Of a stretch of 21,941 nucleotides of DNA, positions 1,627 to 21,530 are shown one piece after another. The position numbers and the translations under genes are program-made. Source of the DNA: Octopus sinensis (Eukaryota); contig NW_021837021.1 of assembly GCF_006345805.1 (NCBI RefSeq), positions 1-21,941 on the forward strand. The letters are read 5' to 3'. Within the stretch, counting starts at the first letter, position 1, and each line of letters begins with the position of its first letter. Below the pieces are notes generated by a model, which made no database searches, had not been told where the DNA came from, and saw only the letters and a program-made list of their open reading frames with translations.

Positions 1627-2003
1627 TTCTTTTATCATTTTGTTCTTTTACTTATTTCAGTCATTTGACTGCAGCCATGCTGGAGCACCGCCTTTGGTCG
1701 AACAAATCGACCCCAGGACTTATTCTTTGTAAGTCTAGTACTTATTCTATCGGTCTCTTTTGCCGAGCCGATAAGTTACGGGGACGTAAACAAACCAACA
1801 TCGGTTGTCAAAGCGATGGCGGGGGGACAAACAGAAACACAAATACATACATATTTTTTCAGTTTCCATCAACCAAATCCACTCACAAGGCCTTGGTCGG
1901 CCCGAGGTATGGTAGAAAACACTCGCCCAAGGTGCCACGCAGTGGGACTGAACCCGGAACCCTGTGGTTGGAAAGCAAGCTTCATACCACACAACCACGC
2001 CTG
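1627..2003 (-). mobile_element. tRNA-derived SINE (octopus OK-like family), full length
   Basis: Minus strand: head CAGGCGTGGTTGTGTGG...CCGGGTTCAGTCCCACTGCGTGGCACCTTGGGC, body GGCCGACCAAGGCCTTGTGAGTGGATTTGG, tail GTGCTCCAGCATGGCTGCAGTCAAATGACTGAAA. Many related copies occur in the window. Confidence 0.9.
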
Positions 2004-5229: not shown

Positions 5230-5538
5230 GTGGGGGCGCAATGGCCCAGTGGTTAGGGCAGCGGACTCGCCATCGTAGGATCGCGGTTTCGATTCCCAGA
5301 CCGGGCGTTGTGAGTGTTTATTGGGCGAAAACACCTAAATCTTCACGAGGCTCCGGCAGGGGGTGGTGGTGATTCCTGCTGTACTCTTTCACCACAACTT
5401 TCTCTCACTCTTTCTTCTGTTGGCCTGCTCATTTAGCCAGCAGGGTGGCGTCATTTGAAGGCTAAAACAATGCGAAGCGCATTGTGACTAGCAATGTGTA
5501 GCAACATCTGATGGCCTGGTCGGTCACGTGATCACGTG
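5230..5538 (+). mobile_element. Full-length tRNA-derived SINE with perfect 12-bp TSD
   Basis: A box TGGCCCAGTGG, B-box-like GGTTTCGATTCC, 3' end (CACGTG AT)x2; TSD ATTAGGTTAGCT at 5218-5229 and 5539-5550. Confidence 0.93.
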
Positions 5539-6830: not shown

Positions 6831-7084
6831 TCAGGATTTCCTGTAAATCGGCTCAAATTTACAGAATTGGTAATTCAGAACGATATACAATCGGCTCAAA
6901 AAAGAAAATGAAGAAATAAGAATTCTAAATTAGTAAACAGCTTGAATTTAAAGAAAATAAAAATCGGGCACGGCGGCGCAGCCCTGAAATGAAGCGCACA
7001 CCATCACCACCGCCACCCCCACGGCTAGCGCAATCTGGGTACCCCCGGCAAGCTACGGAATGGGGTTTGCGATTCTTTGATCAT

Positions 7085-7450
7085 TACAGATGTCATAACA
7101 GGGGCCGGTGGTGGTGGTGGGTGTGGCGGTGGTGGCGGTGATGGTGATGATGGTGGTGGCGGTGGTGGTGTTGGTGGTGGCGGTGGCGGAGTTAGCGGTT
7201 GTAGCATTGATGTTGATGATGGTGGTGGCGACGGTGGTGTTGTTGGTGGTGGTGGTGATTGTCGTTGTCAGTCATATTTGCGGTGGTAGCGTTGGTGAAT
7301 AGTCGTTGCTACTACTACAGCCATTGGCGGTGGTGGTGGGGGCGGCAGCGGCGGTGGCAGTGATGGTGGTGCTGGTGGTGGTGCTGGTGGTGATGCTGGT
7401 GGTGGGGGTGGTGCTGTTATTACTGCTGGTGGTCGTGCTGCTACTGCTGC
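7085..7450. repeat. GGT/GGC/GAT trinucleotide low-complexity tract
   Basis: Seen directly; explains the Gly-, Val- and Pro-rich ORFs. Confidence 0.9.
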
Positions 7451-9713: not shown

Positions 9714-9770
9714 ACATATATATTGTGTTTATGTGTGTGTTTATGTGTGTGTGTGTGTGTATCTTTATGT
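9525..9770. repeat. (TA)n/(TG)n microsatellite
   Basis: Seen directly. Confidence 0.95.
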
Positions 9771-9966
9771 CAGTGTTTGTCTCCCTAACATCGCTTGACA
9801 ACCGATGTTGATGTTTTTATGTCCCCGAAACTTAGCGGTTCGGCAAAATAAGTACTAGGCTTACAAAATATTAGTCCTGGGATAGATTTCTTCGACTAGA
9901 GGCTGTGCTCCAGCATGACCGCAGTCAAATGACTGAAATGAGTAAAAGAGTATTAGAGTAAGAGTA
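9770..9966 (+). mobile_element. 3' half of an OK-like SINE
   Basis: CATCGCTTGACAACCGATGTTG...TGCTCCAGCATGACCGCAGTCAAATGACTGAAA is the reverse complement of the 1627-1830 type tail. Confidence 0.85.
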
Positions 9967-10245: not shown

Positions 10246-10419
10246 TCCACAGACGTGACAGAGGAATGGGGGAAGCAAGTGCATTGAAACAGTCCGAAAG
10301 GCGTCGCTAATGACGTTTACTGATGGAATATGGTTTCCAGGAATGAGTTAAAACAACATCCTCCTCCTCCTCCTCATCTGGTTTTCGTTTGTTAATCGCC
10401 GACAGGGGGAGACCTCCGC

Positions 10420-10542
10420 ATTCGCCACAACCACCACAACAACCACCATAAACCATCACCGCATCAACCTACCACCACCGGCGCCATCATCACTACCGTC
10501 ATCATCAGGGTCTTCATCATCATCATCATCATCATCATTATC

Positions 10543-10602
<60 letters not shown>

Positions 10603-11060
10603 CCCACGATTATGATCATTCCATTATCACCACCACGACAACCATTACCACCACAACCATAATCATCATCATTATTACCAGCATCATGCCCACCCCGTAG
10701 ACTATCACCAACACTACTGTTGTCATAACTACAAACACCATCATCATCATCATATGAATGCCGCCGCCACCACCATCATCATCATCATCATCATCTTCTT
10801 TATCATCAGCATCAGCATCACCACCATCACCGTCGTCGCCATCACCGTCATCTCATAATCTTCATCGCCATCATCGTCGTCGTCATCATCGTCATCGCCA
10901 TCATCGTCATTGCCATTATCCTTGACACCATCATCGAGGTCGACATCATCCCCGTCACCATCATCCTCGTCGCCATCATCGTCATCGCCATCATCGTCAT
11001 CGCCATAATCATCGTCGCCATCATCGTCGTCGCCATCATCGTCATCGTCATCGCCATCGT
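10420..11060. repeat. CAC/CAT/AAT/CGT trinucleotide low-complexity tract
   Basis: Seen directly, including pure (AAT)n at about 10540-10600. Confidence 0.95.
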
Positions 11061-11112
11061 CGTTGCTGTTATTGCTTTCGTGGTGGTTAAGGCTTGGTTT
11101 TTATTTCATCTT

Positions 11113-11301: not shown

Positions 11302-11467
11302 AGGCGCAGGCGCGGCTGTGTGGTGAGAATCTTGCTTCCCAACCACATGGTTCCGGGTTCAGTTCCACTGCGTGGCACCTCGGTCGAATGATTTCTATTA
11401 TAGCTTTGGGCCGACCAAAGCCTTGTGAGTGGATTTGGTAGACAGAAACTGGAATAAACCCGTCGTG
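11302..11467 (+). mobile_element. 5' half of an OK-like SINE
   Basis: GGCGCGGCTGTGTGGTGAGAATCTTGCTTCCCAACCACATGGTTCCGGGTTCAG...GGCCGACCAAAGCCTTGTGAGTGGATTTGGTAGAC; its internal microsatellite abuts the RTE tail. Confidence 0.9.
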
Positions 11468-11480
11468 AACACATATATAT

Positions 11481-11511
<31 letters not shown>

Positions 11512-11513
<2 letters not shown>

Positions 11514-12310
11514 TCATTCATCATCATTGTTCGACCGTGGTCGAGACAATGGAATTTACCATGCTACGCCAGACTTCACGGTCCATCATGGCATTACGGA
11601 GGTCCTGTTGCTGGATGCCTGTATCCCTGGATATTACATCAGGGTAGGAGAGTGTGCGCCCTCTGGTATTGCGAGTAGATGGCTTCCAGAGGAGAAGAGT
11701 AGAAATTACTTCTTTTTCAGCTCTACAACAATGTCCAGCAAACTGGACTCTCCTACCTTTCACAAGAGATGACACAGGTGGTAGTTTCCCATATATTTGC
11801 ATTTTGGTTGGATGACACTTCCACGAGAGATTTTGAGCTCTCATAAGGAGGCGAGTGTAGGTTCCATCCAACCGCCTCTCAAGCTTCTTTGATAACGTCC
11901 AGGTTTCTGAGCCATTTAGTAGGATTGGTTCGACTGTGGCTTTGAAGATTTCAAGTTTGAAGTCTCTACTTAGATTTGATGACCAGACCTTATGCATGCC
12001 ATTACAGGCTGACCAGGCTATACCCTTTCTAGTTAGAAAGTCTTTTCCAGATGATGATATGTATGACCCAAGATATTTATAATCAGAAACCATATTTAAG
12101 GGCGCATTGTTGAGAGTATGGATGATGCAATCACTGTTGGACAGGCACTTGTTTATGTATTCAGTTTTGGCCTCATTGAGGTAAAGACCTACACAATTTG
12201 AGGCTTGTTCAAGAGATTGTAAAAGAGACTGGGCATTGGAGAGAGAATCTTGATAGAGCGATGTCGTCAGCAAAGTCAGTGTCTGTCAAGTATCAGCTGG
12301 GTGTCTGGAA
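11512..12310 (-). mobile_element. RTE/RTEX-clade LINE, 5'-truncated; RT C-terminal half
   Basis: ORF 11524-12273 contains LN..KTEY, YKYLGS, ILL(N)GSETWTL..LDGTYTRLL and RRVQFAGHC.R. The catalytic YLTDTDFADDIAL (FADD at 12274-12263) lies in another frame, so there is a frameshift near 12255. The stop is followed directly by a (TGA)n-like tail at 11527-11512. Confidence 0.93.
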
Positions 12311-12560: not shown

Positions 12561-12722
12561 ACATTATTTACATTATTTACATTCGACGGATATTTGTCCT
12601 CATCTTGTTGTTGATGAATGCTGGAGGGTATATCAGCCGAAACAAACAAGATGAGGACAAATATCCGTCGAATGTAAATAATGTAAATAATGTACATAAT
12701 TCCTCATCTCATAAATATGGAA
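12561..12722. mobile_element. Collapsed PLE-type fold-back: perfect 49-bp inverted repeat around a broken hammerhead
   Basis: 12561-12609 is the exact reverse complement of 12645-12693. The 35-nt spacer holds TGATGAA-tGCTGGAGGGTATATCAGCC-GAAAC. Same family as 13439-14044. Confidence 0.85.
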
Positions 12723-12944
12723 TTAGAATCGCTTCTCAACTTACAAGAATTTGCCTGGCGTCGTTTTCACAGATATGGAGTTTGCATGGTTCTTTCAGCA
12801 CTCTGAAGATCGTGATTTACCGTCAAATGATCTGGCAGTTATTTCTTTCTTTTCATTTTTTTTTCCATTCATTTTTGTCAACCGTTACATGTACGTAATC
12901 CTTTTTGCTATAGGCACGATGTCTGAAATCTTTTTAGAGTAAGA

Positions 12945-13070
12945 CGATTACACCGACCTCAGTGTTTTAACTGATAAACATTTCATTAATCCCGAAAGGA
13001 CGAAAGGTAGAATCGACCTGGGCGGAATTTGAACTCATAACGTAGAGACGGACGAAATGCCGCTAAACAC
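12945..13070 (-). mobile_element. OR-like SINE fragment
   Basis: Minus strand GTTTAGCGGCATTTCGTCCGTCTCTACGTTATGAGTTCAAATTCCGCCCAGGTCG...CCTTTCGTCCTTTCGGG matches 605-740. Confidence 0.8.
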
Positions 13071-13205
13071 ATTCATACGACAGGCTTTCGCTCAGTTTCC
13101 GTCAGCGAAATTTCCTGTCAAATGATAACGGTCAACTCAAAGCTACGAAAGAAGATAAACAAGCCAGGATTGTCGAAGAGAGAGACGGAAGCTGGAACCA
13201 CGTAC

Positions 13206-13383
13206 CTGTGAGTCGAACCTCTCATCCACAAATCCACGCTGCTGCCTACGAACAAAGGACAACGTTAACTGCAACGAAGCGGTAACGATCAACCTTTTCA
13301 GTTGATAGTCTGACAGATTATCGATCTTGTCTGCTAGCTGTGGCACAACCATATTGGTAATGAACTCATCAACAACAATTAAT
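13206..13383 (-). CDS. Candidate internal coding exon (178 nt) of an unidentified host gene
   Basis: Acceptor CTGTTTTCAACAG| and donor CAG|GTACGT. Only one of three frames is open: LIVVDEFITNMVVPQLADKIDNLSDYQLKRLIVTASLQLTLSFVRRQQRGFVDERFDSQ. No homology was recognised. Confidence 0.45.
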
Positions 13384-13493
13384 CTGTTGAAAACAGTTTT
13401 CCTAAAAGCTTTGTAAATGAAATATGCAAATATAGATTCATTATTTACATTATTTACATTCGACGGATATTTGTCCTCATCTTGTTTGTTGTT

Positions 13494-13539
13494 AACACAA
13501 AGTTTCGGCTGATATACCCTCCAGCCTTCATCAGGTGTC
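13494..13539 (-). ncRNA. Minimal type I hammerhead ribozyme (stem III mutated)
   Basis: GACAC-CUGAUGA-A-GGCUG(10 nt)CAGCC-GAAAC-UUU-GUGUU. Stem I is GACAC/GUGUU. G16.2 is replaced by U relative to the other arm. Confidence 0.75.
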
Positions 13540-13624
13540 TTGGGGGAATTTCGAACCTGGGTTCTCATTCCTAAGGTATTTTTCGATGTTGTTGTTGTTG
13601 TTGTTATTATTATTATTATTATTA

Positions 13625-13671
<47 letters not shown>

Positions 13672-13677
<6 letters not shown>

Positions 13678-13756
13678 TCACTGCTTGGAATCGAACTCGG
13701 AATCTTTGGGTTAGTTGCCCGCGCTCTTACCACTACGCCAAATGCCCGTGGGCATT
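13672..13756 (-). promoter_or_regulatory. tRNA-derived Pol III internal promoter (SINE head)
   Basis: A box TGGCGTAGTGG (13740-13730), B box GTTCGATTCC (13696-13687), anticodon-arm-like GGG-CAACTAA-CCC. Confidence 0.75.
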
Positions 13757-13795
13757 ATATTAATAATAATAATGATGATAATAATAATAATAATA

Positions 13796-13849
<54 letters not shown>

Positions 13850-13910
13850 CAACAACAACAACATCGAAAAATACCTTAGGAATGAGAACCCAGGTTCGAA
13901 ATTTCCTCAA

Positions 13911-13956
13911 GACACCTGAAGAAGGCTGGAGAGTATATCAGCCGAAATGTTGTGTT
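13911..13956 (+). ncRNA. Minimal type I hammerhead ribozyme
   Basis: GACAC(13911-15)-CUGAAGA(13916-22)-A-GGCUG/CAGCC(13924-28/13939-43)-GAAAU-GUU^GUGUU; predicted cleavage after 13951. Confidence 0.75.
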
Positions 13957-14059
13957 AACAACAAGCAAGGTGAGGACAAATATCCGTCAAATGTAAATAA
14001 TGTAAATATTGTACATAATTCCTCATCTCTTAAATACAGAACTGAATATAGATTCATGT

Positions 14060-14241
14060 TATTCTTTCATTTCTTTCAGTCATTTGACTGCGGCCATGCT
14101 GGAGCACTACCTTTAGTCGAACAAATCGACTTCAGGACTTATTCGTTGTAAGCTTAGTATTTATTCTATCGGTATCTTTTGCCGAACCCCTAAGTTTCGA
14201 GGACGTAAGTACACCAACATCGGTTGTCAAGCGATGGCGGA

Positions 14242-14288
<47 letters not shown>

Positions 14289-14405
14289 GACGGGCTTCTT
14301 TCAGTTTCCGTCTGCCAAATCCACTCACAAGGCTTTTGTCGGCCCGAGGCTATAGCAGAAGACACTTGCCCAAGGTGCCAAGCAGTGGGACTGAACCCGG
14401 AACCA
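14060..14405 (-). mobile_element. OK-like SINE with internal (CA)n, 5' end of head missing
   Basis: Matches 1627-1965 throughout. Confidence 0.9.
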
Positions 14406-14490
14406 TCGAGTCTTTCAACGAAACCCTTCGAGGCAGTGCTCCAACATGACCGCAACGCAATGACTGAAACAAGTAAAAGATAGAATATAA
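14406..14490 (+). mobile_element. OK-like SINE tail fragment, opposite orientation, abutting the previous copy
   Basis: GAGGCAGTGCTCCAACATGACCGCAACGCAATGACTGAAACAAGTAAAAGA. Confidence 0.8.
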
Positions 14491-15145
14491 AAAGTCTCAT
14501 AAGACCTGTACAAAGATGGTCTTTTCCTGCCGGAACATTTTTATGGTACTTCATTCCTTTGTAGAATATAAATAAACCGTACATTAAATACACGTCTTTA
14601 TTTATTTATCTCTTTTTACCTGTCTATGATAAGGTATTAAAAAATCGATGCTTAGTTCCCAGACGTAATCAAAACGACCATAGCATAAAAAAGAAATTCT
14701 TCGATCGTACGAAAACAAAGAAAATTTAGGAAACATTGATGCGCCACGCTCGTCTCTTTATTGCACTGCACCCAACATGGCCGACTACTGGATTAATAAT
14801 GTGATTAACACGTTGCCGTATGACATAGCAAGCTGCAAACTTAAATAAAACATGTCTGAGTATAATAATATAATAGACTGGCGATGTGTGATTGGGTAGA
14901 GCTGGGATAATAGCCGCGAAGTATTATTCGGTACATTTTAATTGTGTCATGAGCGAACGATGAATTGAGCAAGGCCATTCGACAACAAAACCAACAACAA
15001 CAGCAGCAGCAGCAACAACAACTACGTTAAGAGCAAGTATTGTAGTGACACAAATACATACATACCTACATAAATATATATATGCGTGTGTGTTTGTATG
15101 TGTACATACACACATACACATACATACACATACACAAACAAACAT

Positions 15146-15571
15146 ATTCTTTTATTCTTTTACACGTTGCAGTCATTAGACTGCGGCCATGCTGGGGCAT
15201 AGCCTTGAATTTTTTGTAGTCGAATGAATCAACCCCAGTATTTATTGTTTTTTAAAGCTCGGTACTTATTCTATCGGTCTCTTTTGCCGAACCGCAATGT
15301 TACGGGAACGCAACACACCAACACCGGTTGACAAACGGTGGAGTGGGGGACAAATACAGACACAAAGACACATACACACACACTCACATACACCACACAC
15401 AGACACACAAGACAGGCTTCTTTCAATTTCCGTCTCCCAAATCCACTCACAAGGCTTTCGTCGGCCCGAGACTATAGTTGAAGACGTTTGTCCAATTTGC
15501 CACGCAGCAAGACTGAACCCGGAACTATGTGGTTGGTAAGCAAGCTACTTACCACACATCCACGCCTGCGC
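15146..15571 (-). mobile_element. OK-like SINE, full length
   Basis: Head GCGCAGGCGTGGATGTGTGGTAAG at the right end, internal CA-rich tract, tail CAGCATGGCCGCAGTCTAATGACTG at the left end. Confidence 0.9.
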
Positions 15572-15660
15572 ACTCCACACAGCTATATATAAAATAATGA
15601 AGGCAGCTCTACTCAATATAAAGCGAAAAAGAAAAAAATCACTTGTCACAAATTGTGACT

Positions 15661-15735
15661 GAGGGCCCGGGATAGCACCTACATTGGGGGCCCAGAGTAG
15701 CACCTACATTGAGGGCCCAGGGTAGCGCCTACATT
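15661..15735. repeat. 3 x 25-bp GC-rich minisatellite
   Basis: Units at 15661-85, 15686-710 and 15711-35; consensus GAGGGCCCAGGGTAGCACCTACATT. Confidence 0.92.
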
Positions 15736-15774
15736 CCTAGATAAAAGAGTTAGAAAAAAAAAAACCTTATACAG

Positions 15775-15902
15775 GACAGGTTTCTTTCGATTTCCAGCTA
15801 CGAATCCTCTCATAAGGCTTTGAATGGCCCGAGGTGCCCTGCTATGGGACTGAACCCAAGACCATGTTGTTAGGAAACAAACTTTTTACCCCACAGCCAC
15901 AT
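15775..15902 (-). mobile_element. Degenerate OK-like SINE 5' half
   Basis: GGCCCGAGGTGCC...GGGACTGAACCC...CCACAGCCAC matches 1860-2000 with a deletion. Confidence 0.7.
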
Positions 15903-16011
15903 GAATTTGTGCATCTATCATATTTAATGAAAATATATAATGATAGCCAAAGCCATATAACCTGAGGTATTCGTCCGGAGACGAAAACTGTATATATGTA
16001 TATATATATAT

Positions 16012-16331
16012 ATATTGTTGTATTTAGGCAAGGTCATTTTTTCTCTTGCCAAATAAACTCACGCAATAGATATATATATTCGTTCTTCATTTGCTTATCG
16101 TTGTTCTTATTTTTTATGTCCATTTTCTAGACGCCTTTCGTCTAGACGCCTGTTACGTCTTCAGCGACGAAGTTAAATGGAGGGTCACTGAAGAGGTCAC
16201 AGGCGTGCAACGAAAGGTTTCCACACAATGGACATGAAATAAAAACAACAATAAACAAGTGAAGAACAAATATCTATTGCGTGAGTTTATTTGGCAAGAA
16301 AAAAGTGACCTTCCCGAAATATAAACAATAT
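16012..16331. mobile_element. Older fold-back element, second family, with degenerate hammerhead cores in both arms
   Basis: 16012-16164 is a diverged reverse complement of 16188-16331 and shares an exact TCTTGCCAAATAAACTCACGCAATAGATAT block. Plus strand: CTGAAGA(16188-94)...ACAGGCGT...ACGAAAGG(16212). Minus strand: CTGAAGA(16164-58)...ACAGGCGT...ACGAAAGG(16139). Confidence 0.75.
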
Positions 16332-16368
16332 GTATGCGTATTTATGCATAAATATACTTTATTAAAAA

Positions 16369-16455
16369 GCACCAAAATATCACAAAAGCTGTTACTCAGA
16401 GTTTCACGTTCCTGTTAGAAACTCTGAGTAACAGTTTTTGTGATATTTTTGGTGC
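16369..16455. repeat. 37/38-bp inverted repeat with 12-nt loop
   Basis: 16369-16405 versus 16418-16455: one mismatch and one indel. Confidence 0.9.
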
Positions 16456-16459
16456 GGAG

Positions 16460-16570
16460 ATGACTGTCCGCAAGTGCGCATTCCGTGAGTCACAGTGGCT
16501 GTTCCAGCGCATTTTCCTTGGAATCCTCCGGGGCAACGCCTCTTCTATTTTCTCAGCTGGGGTCATGAGG
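16460..16570 (+). pseudogene. Relic C-terminus of a restriction-like-endonuclease non-LTR retrotransposon (CRE-like)
   Basis: RESQWLFQRIFLGILRGNASSI resembles the terminal ..FLFQRLS.AIQRGNA.S. motif of CRE-type ORFs; matched by eye only. Confidence 0.55.
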
Positions 16571-17782
16571 TGGTCTGAATTACAAGAAATCGAGAGAATG
16601 GTAGAATTCCGTAGTTGGTCAGTATACCAAAAAGAGACACACTTGAATATTACGTATTCAATATATCTATACATACACACACGCACATTCAACATGGACA
16701 CAGTTTGCGAACAACGAAAGTGCATTTCTAAGGATACATTAAGTGTTTCACTGTTCCAAGGATCAATAAAATATCTTTTGAACTTCTAGAATATTAGCTC
16801 AAATGACTGAAGAACTTTTGAGAAATGGCTTTTCAAAACAGGACTTTCAAAGGAAATAATTACCTAATTTGCTAAGTTACAACAATAAATGTATTCGACA
16901 ATTTCAGATTAATCTATATGTAAGAAAAAAAAATGGTTGCCTCTATGTGCTAAGCTAAGTAAGTTATTCTGCTGGCCATGCTTGTGTAGCGTGTAACCAT
17001 TTTCAAATAGTAGCGCCAATTTGTGGTAGTTGGCAATATGACGTAATGTCGTATTGCCGAAGAAATATGATTTTCGTTTTTCCATTGGTTAATATAACTG
17101 CTCATATAGGAATTCTAAAAGTTAGTTAAACAATATTTTTATGTGATTTCGATTCTTTTAAGTCAAGTTGAGCAGTTATAAAAACCCTAGATTTTGGGAA
17201 AAACTTCAGTGTTTGTTGGATGTAACTAAACTCCACGACACTCACTCCTTTGAGACGTTGGTTATATTTTTATGCCATGTCTATGAAAAATCCAACACTT
17301 GTTATTTAATTTTGGAGTGGTAAAGTTTATGATGAAAACATAAACGTTCTCAAAGACATACGAAATCTTTTTAGATCTTAAAACATTTGGGAATGTTCCG
17401 ATAGACTTACAAGTAGATGCGTATAAAAAAAAACTGCATGATGAAATTTGGTGAAAGAGATCTATTCTGCAGCGATTCAGTTATTGTTCTCGGGCGACAG
17501 AAATTATCATTTCGGGGTCATTTTGAATCCAAAGAATCACAGAAATTATAAAGAACTCTTATATTCAATCAGTAAAAGTGTTTAAATCCATTATAACAGC
17601 GACCCCTTCTCTGGTTATGTTACGAAACTAAATAGTTTTCATTTTAGCGAATTCCTTTCTCCCGACTCCAATTTCATGCCGTCTCGGCCAGGCGAGGGCC
17701 AACATATTTATATCATCTCTGATCGTGCATTTATGATTTAGGTCATTCACCAGACACTTTATTCTTTCTATTGAGTTTTTAA

Positions 17783-17787
17783 ATGTG

Positions 17788-17818
<31 letters not shown>

Positions 17819-18000
17819 TGTGGTGTGTGTGTGTGTGTGTGTGTGTGAATGTGTGCATTGGTTCATGTAGAACGAATGGGAGGAGTGCTAAATATATATT
17901 GTAAAGAATATGTTTTATATATTTATTCACACACACACACACACACATATGTATATATATAAGTATATTTGTATGTAAGCGTGTATGCATTTATGTATGC
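17783..18000. repeat. (TG)n, (CA)n and (TA)n microsatellites
   Basis: Seen directly. Confidence 0.9.
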
Positions 18001-18295
18001 TTGTGTCTACGCATGTTTGTATAGCTCCGTCAACAATAAAATGACTGAAGTTTTTAAAAATATAATGCAGAGCGAATATAAAACATGACATCATATTGAT
18101 TCCAAAATGTTTGTTAGATCAGAGACACAACTAACGGACTGGCCAACGTGAATGAGAGCCGGACATTACTAATTCTCAGGAACTGAAATGAAATCTGACA
18201 TTTTAGTATTATATTTGGAAAATTCACATTTCTAAAGAACACGAAGTCACTCTCCAGTCTGTCCCTATTCGTCATATTTTCCTAAGCATTGTTCG

Positions 18296-18607
18296 AAGTG
18301 GAGGCACATGGCCTAGTGATTAGAGCAGTGGACTCGCGGTCGAGGGATCGCGGGTTCGAACCTCAGACCGGGCGATGTATATGTTTATGAGCGAAAACAC
18401 TTAAGTTCCACGCGGCTCCTGCAGAAGGTAATGGCGAACTTCTGCTGACTCTTTCGCCACAACTTTCTCTCACTCTTTCCTCCTGCATCTTGCAGCTCAC
18501 CTGCGATGGACTGGCGTCCCGTCCAGGTGGGAAACCTATACGCCAAGGAAACCGGGAAACCGGCCCTTATGAGCCAGGCATGGCTCGAGAAGGAACAAAT
18601 AAACAAC
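18296..18607 (+). mobile_element. Full-length tRNA-derived SINE with 12-bp TSD (1 mismatch); same head as 5230-5538, different 3' half
   Basis: A box TGGCCTAGTGA, B box GGTTCGAACC, shared block CCACAACTTTCTCTCACTCTTTC, then CCTGCGATGGACTGGCGTCCCGTCCAGG. TSD AAGCATTGTTCG (18284-95) / AAGCATTCTTCG (18608-19). Confidence 0.9.
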
Positions 18608-18802
18608 AAGCATTCTTCGCCGCACCAACACCCAACGTCACTGGCAATGCTTAGCGGGAAACTCTTAAGGACTTTGATAGTATGACTTTTTTTCAAATTA
18701 TACAATATTCGTTTCGACGTAATTAAATTTTCAGATCTAATATTTTGAAAAACAAAGTCAAAAACCATTTGGTATTGTTCCTGATTGGTTATCAAAATTG
18801 AA

Positions 18803-19251
18803 AGCAGAAGCATTGGCTGTGTGGTTAAGAAACTCGCTTCACAAGCATGGGGTTTCGGGTTCAGTCCCACTGAGTGGTACCTTGGGTTGTTCCTTCAACT
18901 ATATTTTCAACCAATATCTTGTGAGATATTGGTTGGATGAAAACTCTGTAGCATGCTGCCCTATATATATATATATACGTATGTATACATACATGCATGT
19001 ATGCATGTACATATGTATGTCTGCAGGTAGGTGTGTATATATATATGTACGTCTTTGTGTTGGTTGGACGTAAACCAACCAACACAAAGTAACTCAGCGA
19101 TTTGGTGAAAGAGACCGATTGAATAAGTACCAGACTTAGAAAACCAAACAAACAAAAAATAACTACTGGGAATCGGTTTATTCGACTAAACCCTTGAAAG
19201 CAGTACTCCAGCATGGCCGCAGTCCAATGACTGAAACAAGCAACGGATAAA
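18803..19251 (+). mobile_element. OK-like SINE, full length, with two internal perfect hairpins
   Basis: Head TGGCTGTGTGGTTAAG...GGGTTCAGTCCCACTG, tail CTCCAGCATGGCCGCAGTCCAATGACTGAAACAAG. Confidence 0.85.
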
Positions 19252-19277
19252 ACACACTAATATACAATAGAGCAAAG

Positions 19278-19490
19278 GTGGAGAGGTGGCAGAATCGTTA
19301 CAGCGTCGCAAAAAAATGCGTCGCAGCATTTTGTCCGTCTTTCTGAATTTAAATACCGCACCGAGTTTGTCTTTGCCTTTCATTCTTTCGGGGTCGATGA
19401 AATAAGCACCAGTTGCGTACTGGGGCCAATGTAATCGGTTTACTTCCTTCTCTGAAATTGCCGGCGTTGTGCCAATAGTTGAAGCTAATA
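19278..19490 (+). mobile_element. OR-like SINE
   Basis: TGGCAGAATCGTTA head and central CTTTGCCTTTCATTCTTTCGGGGTCGATGAAATAAGCACCAG; the 3' tail differs from 740-800. Confidence 0.8.
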
Positions 19491-19756
19491 TATATTAGAG
19501 CAATTAAAAATGATAGTGCTGAATTACGATATGACATTTTTCATAACGTCTGATTGCGGATATTAAGAATATGCATTGTAGTCACAACACAAACAACACA
19601 CTTAGATAACAATCTGCTCTCAAACACGCCACCTCTCACTCAACGTTTCTTTGGTATCTTTGTGCATTTAAGTGGATGACTTTTAAATAGACAGCAATAC
19701 GTGATCCGCTTGTAATGTGGGATGTCCGGTTGTGCAGCAACTGACACACAATAGAT

Positions 19757-19811
19757 GACAGACAGACAGACAGACAGAAAGACAGACAGACATACAGACA
19801 GACAGACAGAC

Positions 19812-19869
<58 letters not shown>

Positions 19870-19985
19870 AGGAAATATCGGGCTCCAAGTATTTTCTTTA
19901 CTATATATATAATACATATATATATATTATATATAATATATATATATAGATATATATATACATACATACATACATACACATATAT

Positions 19986-20083
<98 letters not shown>

Positions 20084-20095
20084 TATATATATAAA
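19757..20095. repeat. (GACA)n(GATA)n and (TA)n microsatellites
   Basis: Seen directly. Confidence 0.95.
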
Positions 20096-20286
20096 TAGAT
20101 GAGTGTATTTTTACCTTGTTAACAATTAACACGGAAAAATAAATAAATAGTTACCAGGGCAGCAAAATCTCACAAGTAAAGATGTTGCAACTCCTTGTTT
20201 ATAAAGGTTGAACTTCGTGTTTACGTTGAATATTTTGAATAATATGAATAAAAAATGGAGTTAACGCAGTTTAAACAAGTATTTTT

Positions 20287-20372
20287 ACTTTCTACACATG
20301 TTTCGAAAATTCCACTGATACTATTCAAAAGAATAAATGGTATAAACAATGCAATCTTCTCTTCGGGAAAGT
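20287..20372 (-). ncRNA. Type I hammerhead ribozyme (U4C core variant), identical to 20741-20826
   Basis: Exact reverse complement of the plus-strand copy; predicted cleavage between 20293 and 20292. Confidence 0.75.
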
Positions 20373-20444
20373 GAAAAAAACGAAACTCGTCAATACGACA
20401 TTTTAGCAAAAAATGATGGATTTGTATAGCGATAGACATACCGC

Positions 20445-20541
20445 TGCCCCGGGTGAGGCACGAACTCACAACCTCCGCATATCTCCCGACTTGTGAGTTA
20501 ACACAAGGAAGGTACTGTCTATAAGTACGGCGCGCTAACCG
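20445..20541 (-). pseudogene. Intron-containing tRNA-Ile(UAU) relic, about 16 nt missing at the 5' end
   Basis: CGGTTAGCGCG-CCGTA-CT-TAT(20523-21)-A-[39-nt intron 20519-20481]-A-TGCGG-AGGTT-GTGAG-TTCGTGC-CTCAC-CCGGGGC-A follows the eukaryotic Ile-UAU layout. The 5' acceptor strand and half the D arm are absent, and T-loop A58 is T. Confidence 0.85.
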
Positions 20542-20740
20542 CTCTATCATTATATATAATTTAGACTTTAATTTCCTTTATATTTAACATTCACTATTAA
20601 TATCCCTACTCTTTCTGTTAGCTACTTATGACGTTATATCATATAACGTTTTTTAAACAATATTAATAGCGTTCTGTCTATCGCTATACGAATCCATCAT
20701 TTTTTGCTAAAATGTCGTATTGACGAGTTTCGTTTTTTTC

Positions 20741-20826
20741 ACTTTCCCGAAGAGAAGATTGCATTGTTTATACCATTTATTCTTTTGAATAGTATCAGTG
20801 GAATTTTCGAAACATGTGTAGAAAGT
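20741..20826 (+). ncRNA. Type I hammerhead ribozyme (U4C core variant) with extended stem II
   Basis: Stem I ACUUUC(20741-46)/GAAAGU(20821-26); core CCGAAGA(20747-53); stem II GAAGAUU/AAUUUUC plus CAUUG/CAGUG, AUAC/GUAU and UAUUC/GAAUA; GAAAC(20809-13)-AUGU-GUA^ with cleavage after 20820. Confidence 0.78.
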
Positions 20827-20867
20827 AAAAATACTTGTTTAAACCTGCGTTAACTCCATTTTTATTC

Positions 20868-20899
<32 letters not shown>

Positions 20900-20914
20900 T
20901 ATATTCTGATCTCT

Positions 20915-21170
20915 CTCTCTTCTGACCCTTTCGGTCATGAATGACCATGGGATTGCACCTAGAAAGTTACCCTCCTAGACACAAGTCCGGGCAAGGTTAT
21001 TTATGGAAGACCAGCAGTCGCCCATGCATACCGGCCTCCCCTCTCCACGCCACCAGTGTTATCCAAGGGAAAGACAAAGGCCGATACAGCTTGGCACCTG
21101 TGACGTCGCAACTCATTTCTACAGTTGAGTGAACTGGAGCAACGTGAAATAAAGTGCCTTGCTCAAGAAC

Positions 21171-21177
<7 letters not shown>
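20915..21177 (-). mobile_element. SINE lacking its tRNA head (central domain plus RTE-like tail)
   Basis: Minus strand GTGTTCTTGAGCAAGGCACTTTATTTCACGTTGCTCCAGTTCACTCAACTGTAGAAATGAG...GTGCAATCCCATGGTCATTCATGACCGAAAGGGTC; family assigned by eye. Confidence 0.7.
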
Positions 21178-21206
<29 letters not shown>

Positions 21207-21209
<3 letters not shown>

Positions 21210-21360
21210 CTTGTTTCAGTCATTTGGTTTGTGGCCAAGATGGAGCACTCCCTTGAAGAATTTTAGTCTTTTAGTCGAATGAATCAACCCCAATACTTTT
21301 GTTTTCTTTTGTAAGCCTTTTACTTATTCTGTCAGGTCTCTTACGCTAAACCCCGCTACA
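21207..21360 (-). mobile_element. Degenerate OK-like SINE tail
   Basis: TTACTTGTTTCAGTCATTTG...GGCCAAGATGGAGCAC...GTCGAATGAATCAACCCC matches 15146-15300. Confidence 0.75.
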
Positions 21361-21379
21361 TGAAGTACAAATCGATCTT

Positions 21380-21530
21380 GCTCCCTGACGAAGGAAGCCG
21401 GTATTACACTAATGTCTATATGCATCCATTTACTGATTGCAAAATCTTGACTTTTTGCACACTCCATCTGTTAATTATGAATAGTGCAACTATTACATAA
21501 TTCTGAACTCCCGGAAACAGCTGTCGGCCC
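21380..21530 (+). ncRNA. Solo hammerhead-like motif, canonical core, weak stems
   Basis: CUGACGA (21385-91), about 122 nt, then GAAAC-AGCU-GUC (21514-25) with a palindromic stem III loop. Stem I is only CC/GG and the base of stem II is imperfect. Confidence 0.5.

What the first reader, a model, noticed from the sequence alone, without database searches (positions are those of the whole stretch)
12561..21530. Recurrent tRNA-head plus hammerhead fold-back architecture in several unrelated families: possible PLE-mobilised SINE/retrozyme system
Seen: four fold-back loci (12561-12722, 13439-14044, 16012-16331, 20242-20871) from three families that share no obvious sequence beyond the ribozyme core. 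Each has hammerhead core motifs at the inner part of its arms or in its spacer. Two have a tRNA-derived sequence in the spacer, oriented into one arm. A solo core sits at 21385-21525. Established: PLEs carry minimal type I hammerheads with palindromic stem III in their pseudo-LTRs and often insert with an inverted, truncated terminal repeat; Schistosoma SM-alpha repeats combine a Pol III SINE-like unit with a hammerhead. Inference: these are non-coding, tRNA-headed RNAs that self-cleave and borrow PLE RT/GIY-YIG machinery, formed independently more than once in this genome. I cannot tell whether this is already described for octopus.
Basis: partly seen in the sequence, partly recalled or inferred. 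Interest (0 to 1): 0.88.

Follow-up and report, generated by a model that had tools for sequence, protein, structure and literature searches.

The report
Octopus hammerhead SINE inserted as inverted pairs
Several small hairpin-shaped repeats in this octopus-like DNA are back-to-back paired insertions of short non-coding retroelements, and one family joins a tRNA-like promoter head to a Penelope-type hammerhead tail, a combination that seems undescribed in cephalopods but is built from known parts.

Summary
The four fold-backs are real: arms of 49-220 nt, 76-100% complementary, from three unrelated families.

**Hammerheads.**
- L2 has a complete hammerhead in both arms: exact CUGANGA/GAAA core, 5-bp helix I, 6-bp helix II, an extra A before G10.1, minimal helix III and a UU cleavage site. 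Only 7 of 1000 shuffled windows give any hit.
- L4 has the same architecture but a U4-to-C core change.
- L1 is a truncated, dead copy of the L2 family.
- L3 has only the two boxes, at chance level.
- The 'solo core' at 21385 fails.
- Rfam reports no hammerhead, and only a sub-threshold tRNA hit in L4.

**Insertion signature.** L1 and L2 show the published signature of Penelope-like elements (PLEs): head-to-head 5'-truncated copies and a 32-33-nt tail on one side only, at the same position in both loci. L2 also has a clean 13-bp AT-rich target duplication.

**tRNA parts.** The longer L2 copy starts with a degenerate tRNA-like head with A and B boxes and no T-runs downstream. This family reads as a Pol III SINE with a PLE-type 3' module. 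L4's tRNA-Ile(UAU)-like piece lacks its A box and is followed by T6/T7 runs.

**Limits.** No PLE partner or further genomic copies could be retrieved. Repeated independent origin is not shown.

The parts
12561..12612 (-). L1 left copy of family A: 5'-truncated (starts at AACAACAAGAUGAGG), ends at ...GUAAAUAAUGU, no tail
   Evidence: inverted repeat; alignment
12613..12726 (+). L1 right copy of family A: starts inside the hammerhead core (UUGAUGA), has a 14-nt deletion removing the cleavage site and the helix I 3' strand, carries the tail from about 12693
   Evidence: alignment; coordinates
13429..13441 (.). L2 target-site duplication, left copy (AATATAGATTCAT)
   Evidence: the only 13-bp exact direct repeat between the flanks
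13442..13753 (-). L2 left copy of family A, full length: tRNA-like head, (AAT)n(AAC)n linker, body, hammerhead, 3' stem-loop; ends at ...GUAAAUAAUG without tail; no T4+ run in 312 nt
13675..13747 (-). Degenerate tRNA-like head. A box TGGCGTAGTGG 13740-13730; B box AGTTCGATTCC 13697-13687
   Evidence: ARAGORN only at -ps80; A/B-box pattern unique in window, 0.003 expected; no Rfam tRNA hit
13494..13539 (-). Hammerhead of the L2 left copy: GACAC|CUGAUGA|A|GGCUGG-AGGGUAUA-UCAGCC|GAA|A-CU-U|U^|GUGUU
   Evidence: descriptor; minimum-free-energy fold equals the hammerhead fold
13762..14044 (+). L2 right copy of family A, 5'-truncated in the (AAT)n linker, with the 33-nt tail at 14012-14044
13911..13956 (+). 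Hammerhead of the L2 right copy: GACAC|CUGAAGA|A|GGCUGG-AGAGUAUA-UCAGCC|GAA|A-UG-U|U^|GUGUU; predicted cleavage after 13951
14045..14057 (.). L2 target-site duplication, right copy
16010..16164 (-). L3 left arm (family B). CUGAAGA at 16164-16158, CGAAAGG at 16140-16134. The GAAA sits in the loop of an 8-bp hairpin. No valid hammerhead
16188..16335 (+). L3 right arm (family B). CUGAAGA at 16188-16194, CGAAAGG at 16211-16217. Only a bulged, weak helix II; no helix I or cleavage site
20242..20449 (-). L4 left arm (family C), with a hammerhead-like motif at 20372-20287
20445..20549 (-). tRNA-Ile(UAU)-like fragment with a 40-nt insert at the intron position. The 5' acceptor strand and A-box region are missing. 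Its 3' end abuts the inner end of the left arm
   Evidence: Rfam tRNA, 5'-truncated, 11.8 bits, E 5.6
20664..20871 (+). L4 right arm (family C); T6 and T7 runs at arm positions 37 and 70
20741..20826 (+). Hammerhead-like motif of family C: ACUUUC|CCGAAGA|57-nt helix II hairpin (G10.1-C11.1)|GAA|A-CAUGUG-U|A^|GAAAGU. Core has C in place of U4
   Evidence: relaxed descriptor gives 0.037 sites per shuffled window; the free fold gives the three-way shape
21385..21525 (+). Not a feature

Best explanation
The fold-backs are paired, head-to-head insertions of short non-coding retroelements. They are best explained by target-primed reverse transcription of the kind shown for Penelope-like elements (PLEs). 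In that mechanism both strands of a staggered break in AT-rich DNA are extended on element RNA, so two 5'-truncated copies point outwards from a central junction.

**Family A (L1, L2).** This is a SINE-like element of about 345 nt. Its parts, in order, are:
- a degenerate tRNA-derived head with A and B boxes, the inferred Pol III promoter;
- an (AAT)n(AAC)n linker;
- a body;
- a PLE-type minimal type-I hammerhead;
- a 3' stem-loop (GAUGAGG...CCUCAUC) in which reverse transcription starts at either of two sites 32-33 nt apart. This would give a tail on one side of the insertion only.

The hammerhead plus 3' stem-loop module is inferred to be copied from the end of an octopus PLE. It would serve mainly as the handle by which the PLE protein recognises the RNA. 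Self-cleavage is possible, probably only as a dimer or with protein help, and is not shown.

**Family C (L4).** It fits the same scheme, with a hammerhead-like fold that has a core deviation. It does not look Pol III-transcribed.

**Family B (L3).** An old paired insertion of unknown class.

**Shown versus inferred.** Shown: the repeats, the motif architecture, the tail asymmetry, the L2 target duplication and the A/B boxes. Inferred: the PLE enzyme as mobiliser, Pol III transcription and any catalysis.
For: **Hammerhead.**
- The full descriptor hits only the L2 arms; 7 of 1000 shuffles give any hit.
- The unconstrained minimum-free-energy fold of both 58-nt regions is exactly helix I plus helix II with an open core.
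- All four substitutions between the two L2 hammerheads fall at N7, loop 2, 15.2 and 16.2. None falls in a stem or a conserved position.
- The motif has the traits listed for PLE minimal hammerheads (PMC4209133): an unpaired nucleotide between A9 and G10.1, a G10.1-C11.1 pair, a long helix II, a 4-5-bp helix I, a minimal helix III, and occurrence as opposite-strand pairs 100-700 bp apart.

**Insertion signature.**
- PMC8557442 describes an inverted 5'-truncated copy next to the element and a 30-40-bp tail often at one end only.
- PMC11167929 shows that a PLE protein cuts and extends both strands, prefers AT-rich targets, and starts reverse transcription at two internal sites that delimit the tail.
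- Here both right-hand copies carry TACATAATTCCTCATCTC.TAAATA..GAA. Both left-hand copies stop at ...GTAAATAATG(T), within 1-4 nt of each other, in two independent loci.
- L2 has a 13-bp AT-rich target duplication.
- The predicted cleavage site lies 60 nt (no tail) and 93 nt (with tail) upstream of the copy ends. In the anole PLE the cut site is at +26 and reverse transcription starts at +111-118.

**Head.** It holds the only A-box/B-box pair in the window (0.003 expected). It is on the same strand as the hammerhead. There is no T4+ run in the 312-nt sense strand.

**Family is repeated.** Its body recurs in two O. bimaculoides protein records.

**L4.** The relaxed descriptor finds only L2 and L4 (0.037 per shuffled window), and the free fold gives a three-way junction.

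**Partners exist.** Octopus genomes hold recently active PLE families (PMC13282606; PMC8967140).
Against: - No Rfam hammerhead hit at E<=10.
- Folding z-scores are modest, -1.9 and -0.9.
- Positions 15.2/16.2 (UG, CU) are not palindromic in the copies present, although that is a stated PLE trait.
- Only one copy carries the head, so the head-body junction has not been shown to recur.
- Only L2 has a clean target duplication. L1's is a degenerate 15-23-nt similarity, while its arms are 100% identical.
- The only protein matches to the family A body peptide were two short octopus records, neither a long PLE ORF.
- L4 has C4 in place of the conserved U4, and its descriptor thresholds were chosen after I saw the candidate.
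- L3 has neither a hammerhead nor a tail.
Confidence: 0.6

Rival explanations
1. The arms are simply heavily 5'-truncated ends (pseudo-LTR/3' parts) of autonomous PLEs inserted as the usual inverted pairs. On this reading there is no independent SINE. The tRNA pieces would be captured by template switching of the reverse transcriptase onto cellular tRNA or pre-tRNA, or would be unrelated neighbours.
For: - PMC4209133 attributes most dispersed minimal hammerheads, and the opposite-strand pairs, to truncated PLEs.
- In L4 the tRNA-Ile-like piece ends at its discriminator base exactly where arm homology begins. It keeps an intron-like insert, lacks its 5' end, and cannot drive Pol III through the T6/T7 runs.
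- L3 and L4 have no other copies in the window.
Against: - The L2 head is far more decayed than a tRNA captured at the age of arms that are 89% alike (no Rfam hit; ARAGORN only at 80%). Yet it keeps intact A and B boxes at proper spacing. That pattern fits an evolved SINE head.
- About 230 nt of linker and body between the head and the hammerhead carry no T-run.
Confidence: 0.22
2. Family A is an ordinary LINE-dependent tRNA SINE (partner such as RTE, CR1 or Dong). Its inverted pairs arise by twin priming, and the hammerhead match is fortuitous.
For: - SINEs and LINEs dominate octopus genomes.
- An RTE fragment lies at 11507-12286.
- The 3' region has three 9-nt repeats (GTAAATAAT, GTAAATAAT, GTACATAAT) that resemble LINE/SINE terminal repeats.
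- The 3-nt microhomology CAT at the L2 left junction is what twin priming would give.
Against: - Classical twin priming inverts a different part of one RNA. It does not duplicate the same part.
- The internal start site is the same to within 1-4 nt in two independent loci.
- The hammerhead has p of about 0.007 per window plus four PLE-specific traits that the descriptor does not require.
- The repeats are internal, not terminal, in the tailed copies.
Confidence: 0.1
3. The loci are MITE or fold-back DNA transposons, or for L4 a local inverted duplication. The arms would be terminal inverted repeats.
For: - L3 and L4 are symmetric to their outer ends.
- Both sit in TA-rich DNA, compatible with a TA target duplication.
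- No tail or long target duplication can be shown for either.
- A separate MITE-like hairpin lies at 16369-16455.
Against: - L2 has a 13-bp target duplication, longer than the fixed 2-11-bp duplications I know for DNA-transposon superfamilies (from memory).
- L1 and L2 have a one-sided 32-33-nt extension.
- The L4 arms fold into a hammerhead-like junction that points outwards, as in L2.
Confidence: 0.08

Closest known systems
Minimal type-I hammerheads of Penelope-like elements (Cervera and de la Pena 2014, PMC4209133)
   Same: - CUGANGA/GAAA core.
- An unpaired nucleotide between A9 and G10.1.
- A G10.1-C11.1 pair.
- A 6-bp helix II and a 4-5-bp helix I.
- Helix III reduced to A15.1-U16.1 plus 2 nt.
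- Found as opposite-strand pairs a few hundred bp apart and as dispersed truncated copies.
   Different: - Here the motif sits about 230 nt downstream of a tRNA-like Pol III head, in an element with no coding capacity.
- Positions 15.2/16.2 are not palindromic in the two copies.
- The L4 version has C4 and a 57-nt helix II.
PLE insertion architecture (Craig et al. 2021, PMC8557442; Frangieh et al. 2024, PMC11167929)
   Same: - An inverted 5'-truncated copy next to the element.
- A 30-40-bp tail at one end only.
- AT-rich or microsatellite targets.
- Two reverse-transcription start sites.
- A hammerhead about 90 nt upstream of the start site.
   Different: - No ORF and no tandem pseudo-LTR.
- The units are 50-345 nt long.
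- The partner PLE has not been identified.
Schistosoma SM-alpha SINE-like hammerhead repeats (Ferbeyre et al. 1998, as cited in PMC8490949 and PMC6155905)
   Same: A short non-autonomous retroelement that combines SINE-like features with a type-I hammerhead.
   Different: - SM-alpha carries a full, fast hammerhead with loop-loop contacts.
- The octopus motif is the minimal PLE type.
- The two are unrelated in sequence.
- The paired inverted insertion and the tail are documented here, not for SM-alpha in the papers I read.
Animal non-LTR retrozymes (Cervera and de la Pena 2020, PMC7229834; Li et al. 2026, bioRxiv 10.64898/2026.07.22.740005)
   Same: Non-coding elements with type-I hammerheads, proposed to be non-autonomous derivatives of PLE ends.
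   Different: - Retrozymes are tandem arrays of 170-400-bp units expressed as circular RNAs.
- These loci are inverted pairs, not tandem arrays.
- Family A has a tRNA-like head.
tRNA-derived octopus SINEs (Ohshima and Okada 1994, cited in PMC10886601; tRNA-Core and tRNA-Deu families, PMC8967140)
   Same: A tRNA-derived head with A and B boxes, short length and high copy number in octopus.
   Different: Known octopus SINEs are treated as LINE-dependent. None is reported with a hammerhead or a PLE-type tail in the papers I could search.

Membership tests
Hammerhead ribozyme, type I / PLE minimal variant | Conserved core: C3 U4 G5 A6 N7 G8 A9 ... G12 A13 A14, A15.1-U16.1, H17 | tested here: met
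   Met exactly in both L2 arms. L4 has C4 in place of U4 and the rest intact. L3 has the boxes only. L1 is truncated in the core.
Hammerhead ribozyme, type I / PLE minimal variant | Three helices around the core, with helix I closing across the cleavage site | tested here: met
   L2: helix I 5 bp, helix II 6 bp, minimal helix III. The free minimum-free-energy fold equals this structure. L4: helix I 6 bp plus extension, long helix II. L3: not met.
Hammerhead ribozyme, type I / PLE minimal variant | Match to a curated covariance model (Rfam Hammerhead_1, HH9 and others) | tested here: not met
   No hammerhead family hit at gathering score or at E<=10, even on 650-700-base sub-regions. Minimal variants without a helix III hairpin may simply score poorly on these models.
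Hammerhead ribozyme, type I / PLE minimal variant | PLE-specific traits: a nucleotide between 9 and 10.1; G10.1-C11.1; palindromic 15.2-16.2 or loop 3 | tested here: inconclusive
   L2: extra A present, G10.1-C11.1 present, but 15.2/16.2 are UG and CU, not palindromic. L4: no extra nucleotide, G10.1-C11.1 present, ACAUGU palindrome present.
Hammerhead ribozyme, type I / PLE minimal variant | Stems kept by compensatory changes across copies | tested here: inconclusive
   Only two intact copies. All 4 substitutions fall in unconstrained positions. No stem position varies, so there is no covariation to count.
Hammerhead ribozyme, type I / PLE minimal variant | Site-specific self-cleavage | not testable with these tools
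   Needs in vitro transcription or RNA-end mapping.
PLE-mobilised (non-autonomous) element | Inverted 5'-truncated copy adjacent, giving inverted repeats around the unit | tested here: met
   All four loci.
PLE-mobilised (non-autonomous) element | [quoted passage not shown] | tested here: met
   L1 and L2: a 32-33-nt tail on the right-hand copy only, with the same boundary in both loci. L3 and L4: not resolvable.
PLE-mobilised (non-autonomous) element | AT-rich or microsatellite target with a variable target duplication | tested here: inconclusive
   L2: clean 13-bp AATATAGATTCAT. L1: degenerate. L3 and L4: TA-rich flanks, no convincing duplication.
PLE-mobilised (non-autonomous) element | 3' module homologous to the end of an autonomous PLE in the same genome | not testable with these tools
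   No octopus PLE DNA could be reached. No PLE remnant is in the window. Collection scans found nothing real.
tRNA-derived SINE (Pol III) | tRNA-related head with A and B boxes at the 5' end | tested here: met
   L2 left copy: A box 11/11, B box 10/11, 32 nt apart, the only such pair in the window. Cloverleaf only at a relaxed ARAGORN threshold. In L4 the A-box region is absent.
tRNA-derived SINE (Pol III) | No Pol III terminator (T4+) inside the unit | tested here: met
   Family A: none in 312 nt. This is weak evidence, since about 1 would be expected by chance. Family C: T6, T7 and three more runs, so not met for L4.
tRNA-derived SINE (Pol III) | The same head-body junction in many dispersed copies | not testable with these tools
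   Only one head-bearing copy is available. The two O. bimaculoides protein-level remnants cover the body only.
Non-LTR retrozyme | Head-to-tail tandem repeats, each with a type-I hammerhead | tested here: not met
   The copies are inverted, not tandem.
MITE / fold-back DNA transposon | Symmetric terminal inverted repeats with a short target duplication of fixed length | tested here: not met
   Family A: one-sided tail and a 13-bp duplication. Families B and C: cannot be excluded.

The most novel reading that the evidence does not exclude
Octopus genomes may contain a class of Pol III-driven, tRNA-headed SINEs whose 3' module is a captured PLE end (minimal hammerhead plus reverse-transcription start stem-loop). 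They would be mobilised by PLE RT/GIY-YIG enzymes rather than by LINEs. More than one lineage (families A and C) would have acquired such a module independently. The hammerhead would act as a protein-recognition handle and perhaps as a dimer-dependent processing site.
Probability: 0.25. Interest if true: 0.7.

Novelty: new variant of a known kind. Interest (0 to 1): 0.5.

Why it matters
SINEs are defined by their dependence on LINEs. A tRNA-headed SINE that instead uses Penelope-like machinery would add a third partnership class, alongside LINE-SINE and LTR-dependent small-RNA elements such as Helenus and Ajax. SINEs make up about 12% of the O. vulgaris genome, and about 900 recently active SINE families there are unclassified (PMC13282606).

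It would also give a compact natural substrate of about 135 nt, from the hammerhead to the tail. That substrate could be used to ask what a PLE protein recognises, and whether the minimal hammerhead is needed for recognition or for cleavage.

On the practical side, such inverted pairs with long (AAT)n centres are prone to misassembly. They can be mis-called as miRNA-like hairpins or MITEs, and one copy is already annotated as a coding exon.

Tried and rejected
**Standard RNA scans.**
- Rfam at gathering score and at E<=10 gave only microsatellite and hairpin miRNA-type noise. It gave no hammerhead, and no tRNA except the 11.8-bit truncated hit in L4.
- ARAGORN at default settings found nothing.

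**Attempts to fetch more copies.**
- Exact-pattern scans of metagenome and viral contigs with two family A patterns gave nothing, or 13 chance 18-mers.
- A protein search with the open frame of the family A body found only two O. bimaculoides records. No DNA could be retrieved for either: one gene spans more than 100 kb, the other is not on record.
- I used the RTE ORF of the window to pull in host contigs. This gave five ENA contigs, L001-L005. They share only the RTE and none of the octopus SINEs, so they come from another animal.
- A protein search with the L4 ORF found nothing.
This is a lead only.
- Craig et al.'s supplementary consensus sequences are not held.

**Rejected readings.**
- The solo core at 21385.
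- The hit at 16807, which has a 4-bp helix II only.
- L3 as a hammerhead.
- L4 as a Pol III SINE.
- Pfam finds nothing in the spurious ORFs over the arms.

Full report
**What the window is.** The 21.9-kb window is AT-rich animal DNA packed with microsatellites and SINE copies. The only protein-level matches to the repeat studied here are two Octopus bimaculoides records. I therefore treat it as octopus DNA; the species is not established.

**The observation: fold-backs.** All four are real.
- L1 has 49-nt arms that are 100% complementary, with a 35-nt spacer.
- L2 has 220-nt arms at 89%. The (ATT)n/(AAT)n runs extend the repeat to 13673 / 13762, which leaves an 88-nt spacer.
- L3 is a roughly 375-bp self-inverted stretch at about 77%.
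- L4 has 205-nt arms at 98% and a spacer of about 215 nt.
- L1 and L2 belong to one family (A). L3 (family B) and L4 (family C) share nothing with it or with each other.

**Standard scans give nothing.**
- Rfam has no hit at gathering score.
- It has no hammerhead hit even at E<=10 on short sub-regions.
- ARAGORN finds no tRNA.

So I wrote explicit descriptors and calibrated them on dinucleotide shuffles of the window.

**Hammerheads in L2.** The descriptor for a type-I or minimal hammerhead required:
- helix I of at least 4 bp;
- CUGANGA, with 0-1 unpaired nucleotide after it;
- helix II of at least 4 bp, then GAAA;
- A15.1...U16.1 and H17;
- helix I closing across the cleavage site.

It hits exactly two places, the two L2 arms at 13911-13956 (+) and 13539-13494 (-). 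Only 7 of 1000 shuffles gave any hit. The motif reads GACAC | CUGAnGA | A | GGCUGG-AGrGUAUA-UCAGCC | GAA | A-(UG or CU)-U | U^ | GUGUU. The unconstrained minimum-free-energy fold of the 58-nt region of each arm is exactly this structure, although the folding z-scores are modest at -1.9 and -0.9. The two copies differ at four positions: N7, loop 2, 15.2 and 16.2. All four are unconstrained.

Several features match the description of PLE minimal hammerheads, although my descriptor did not demand them (PMC4209133). These are the extra nucleotide between A9 and G10.1, the G10.1-C11.1 pair, the long helix II, the short helix I and the near-absent helix III. That paper also reports such motifs as pairs 100-700 bp apart on opposite strands. 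One listed trait is missing: 15.2/16.2 is not palindromic in these copies.

**Hammerheads elsewhere.**
- L1's right copy starts inside the core and has lost 14 nt that include the cleavage site.
- With one core mismatch allowed, the only additional sites in the window are the two L4 arms, 20741-20826 (+) and 20372-20287 (-).
  - The motif reads ACUUUC | CCGAAGA | 57-nt helix II hairpin | GAA | A-CAUGUG-U | A^ | GAAAGU.
  - Shuffles give 0.037 sites per window. I chose those thresholds after seeing the candidate.
  - Its free fold is the three-way junction.
  - U4 is replaced by C, so catalytic competence is doubtful.
- L3 has CUGAAGA-N17/18-GAAA in both arms, but no helix I and no cleavage site. 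In one arm the GAAA is a hairpin loop. That string alone is expected 0.5 times per shuffled window.
- The 'solo core' at 21385 fails every helix test.

**How family A is inserted.** Aligning the four copies in sense orientation shows the following.
- The L2 left copy is full length. The L2 right copy stops in the (AAT)n linker. The L1 copies are shorter still.
- Both right-hand copies continue past ...GTAAATAATG with TACATAATTCCTCATCTC.TAAATA..GAA, 32-33 nt.
- Both left-hand copies stop there, within 1-4 nt of each other.
- L2 is flanked by a perfect 13-bp AT-rich duplication, AATATAGATTCAT.

This is the signature described for PLE insertions: an adjacent inverted 5'-truncated copy and a 30-40-bp tail often present at one end only (PMC8557442). 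It has a biochemical basis. A purified PLE protein cuts and extends both DNA strands, prefers AT-rich sites, and starts reverse transcription at two internal RNA sites that delimit the tail (PMC11167929).

The geometry agrees too. The predicted cleavage site lies 60 and 93 nt from the two copy ends. The 3' region folds into a GAUGAGG/CCUCAUC stem that encloses the first start site and is completed by the tail.

**tRNA parts.**
- The L2 spacer is the 5' end of the full-length copy, on the same strand as its hammerhead. It is too decayed for Rfam or default ARAGORN, and gives a cloverleaf only at the 80% threshold.
- It still carries the only A-box/B-box pair in the window; shuffles give 0.003. 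No T4+ run follows in 312 nt. That fits an evolved Pol III SINE head.
- The L4 spacer holds a tRNA-Ile(UAU)-like fragment with a 40-nt insert at the intron position. Its support is weak: Rfam 11.8 bits, E 5.6, 5'-truncated.
  - The fragment lacks the A-box region.
  - Its 3' end meets the inner end of one arm.
  - T6 and T7 runs follow.
  - About 110 nt of AT-rich sequence lies upstream of it.
  - It is therefore not a working Pol III head. It may be a relic, a template-switch capture or part of a longer element.

**What I could not test.** I could not obtain more genomic copies or any octopus PLE sequence. Three things therefore remain open: recurrence of the head-body junction, covariation in the hammerhead stems, and the identity of the partner. 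Octopus genomes are reported to hold recently active PLE families.

**Comparison with what is known.** All the parts are known:
- PLE minimal hammerheads, including opposite-strand pairs;
- the PLE paired-insertion-plus-tail architecture;
- hammerhead-bearing non-autonomous PLE derivatives, the retrozymes (PMC7229834; 10.64898/2026.07.22.740005);
- the SINE-like SM-alpha of Schistosoma.

Hammerhead_1 hits have been counted in the giant squid genome. I found no report of a tRNA-headed SINE with a PLE-type 3' module, in cephalopods or elsewhere. That is an absence in a limited library.

**Verdict.**
- The claim of repeated independent origin is not shown.
- I rate it a new variant of a known kind, of moderate interest.

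Noticed in passing
window 16369-16455: A separate 87-bp near-perfect hairpin (36-bp arms, 13-nt loop) lies just right of L3. It looks MITE-like or miRNA-like and gets only sub-threshold Rfam miRNA hits.
   Followed up: partly
window 11507-12286 (-); L001-L005: This is the 3' part of an RTE-type LINE ORF (249 aa). Homologues at 70-74% nucleotide identity sit on ENA metagenome contigs (ERZ25072740, ERZ26222911). Those contigs carry none of the octopus SINEs, so the same RTE lineage occurs in another, unidentified animal.
   Followed up: partly
window 13858-14040 (+) and 13442-13600 (-); proteins P0001, P0002: One reading frame stays open through the family A body in every copy. Family A sequence is annotated as coding in O. 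bimaculoides, as A0A0L8FV75 and as the first exon of dystrobrevin beta isoform X1. This may be exonisation or an annotation artefact.
   Followed up: partly
window 1635-2003, 9735-9952, 11304-11467, 14054-14490, 15150-15571, 18814-18886, 19089-19252, 21193-21342: Eight full or partial copies of one abundant SINE family, at 68-85% identity. Several have an internal (CA)n.
   Followed up: no
window 5230-5417 / 18298-18482, and 571-741 / 12937-13069 / 19279-19442: Two further tRNA-like SINE families, with two and three copies. Neither matches the strict A-box/B-box pattern that the L2 head matches.
   Followed up: no
window 20086-20241: 156 bp of unique sequence lies between a long (TA)n tract and L4's left arm, whereas the right arm abuts (TA)n directly. 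It may be part of the inserted unit, as a long one-sided extension, rather than flanking DNA.
   Followed up: no
window 13580-13673 and 13762-13861: About 90 nt of (ATT)n faces about 90 nt of (AAT)n across the tRNA-like head. This long AT-only palindrome would be prone to cruciform formation, slippage and misassembly.
   Followed up: no
window 6990-7440 and 10380-11080: Long imperfect (GGT/GAT)n-type tracts lie on one strand, and their complement (ACC/ATC)n lies 3 kb away. They are coding-like low complexity with no ORF support.
   Followed up: no
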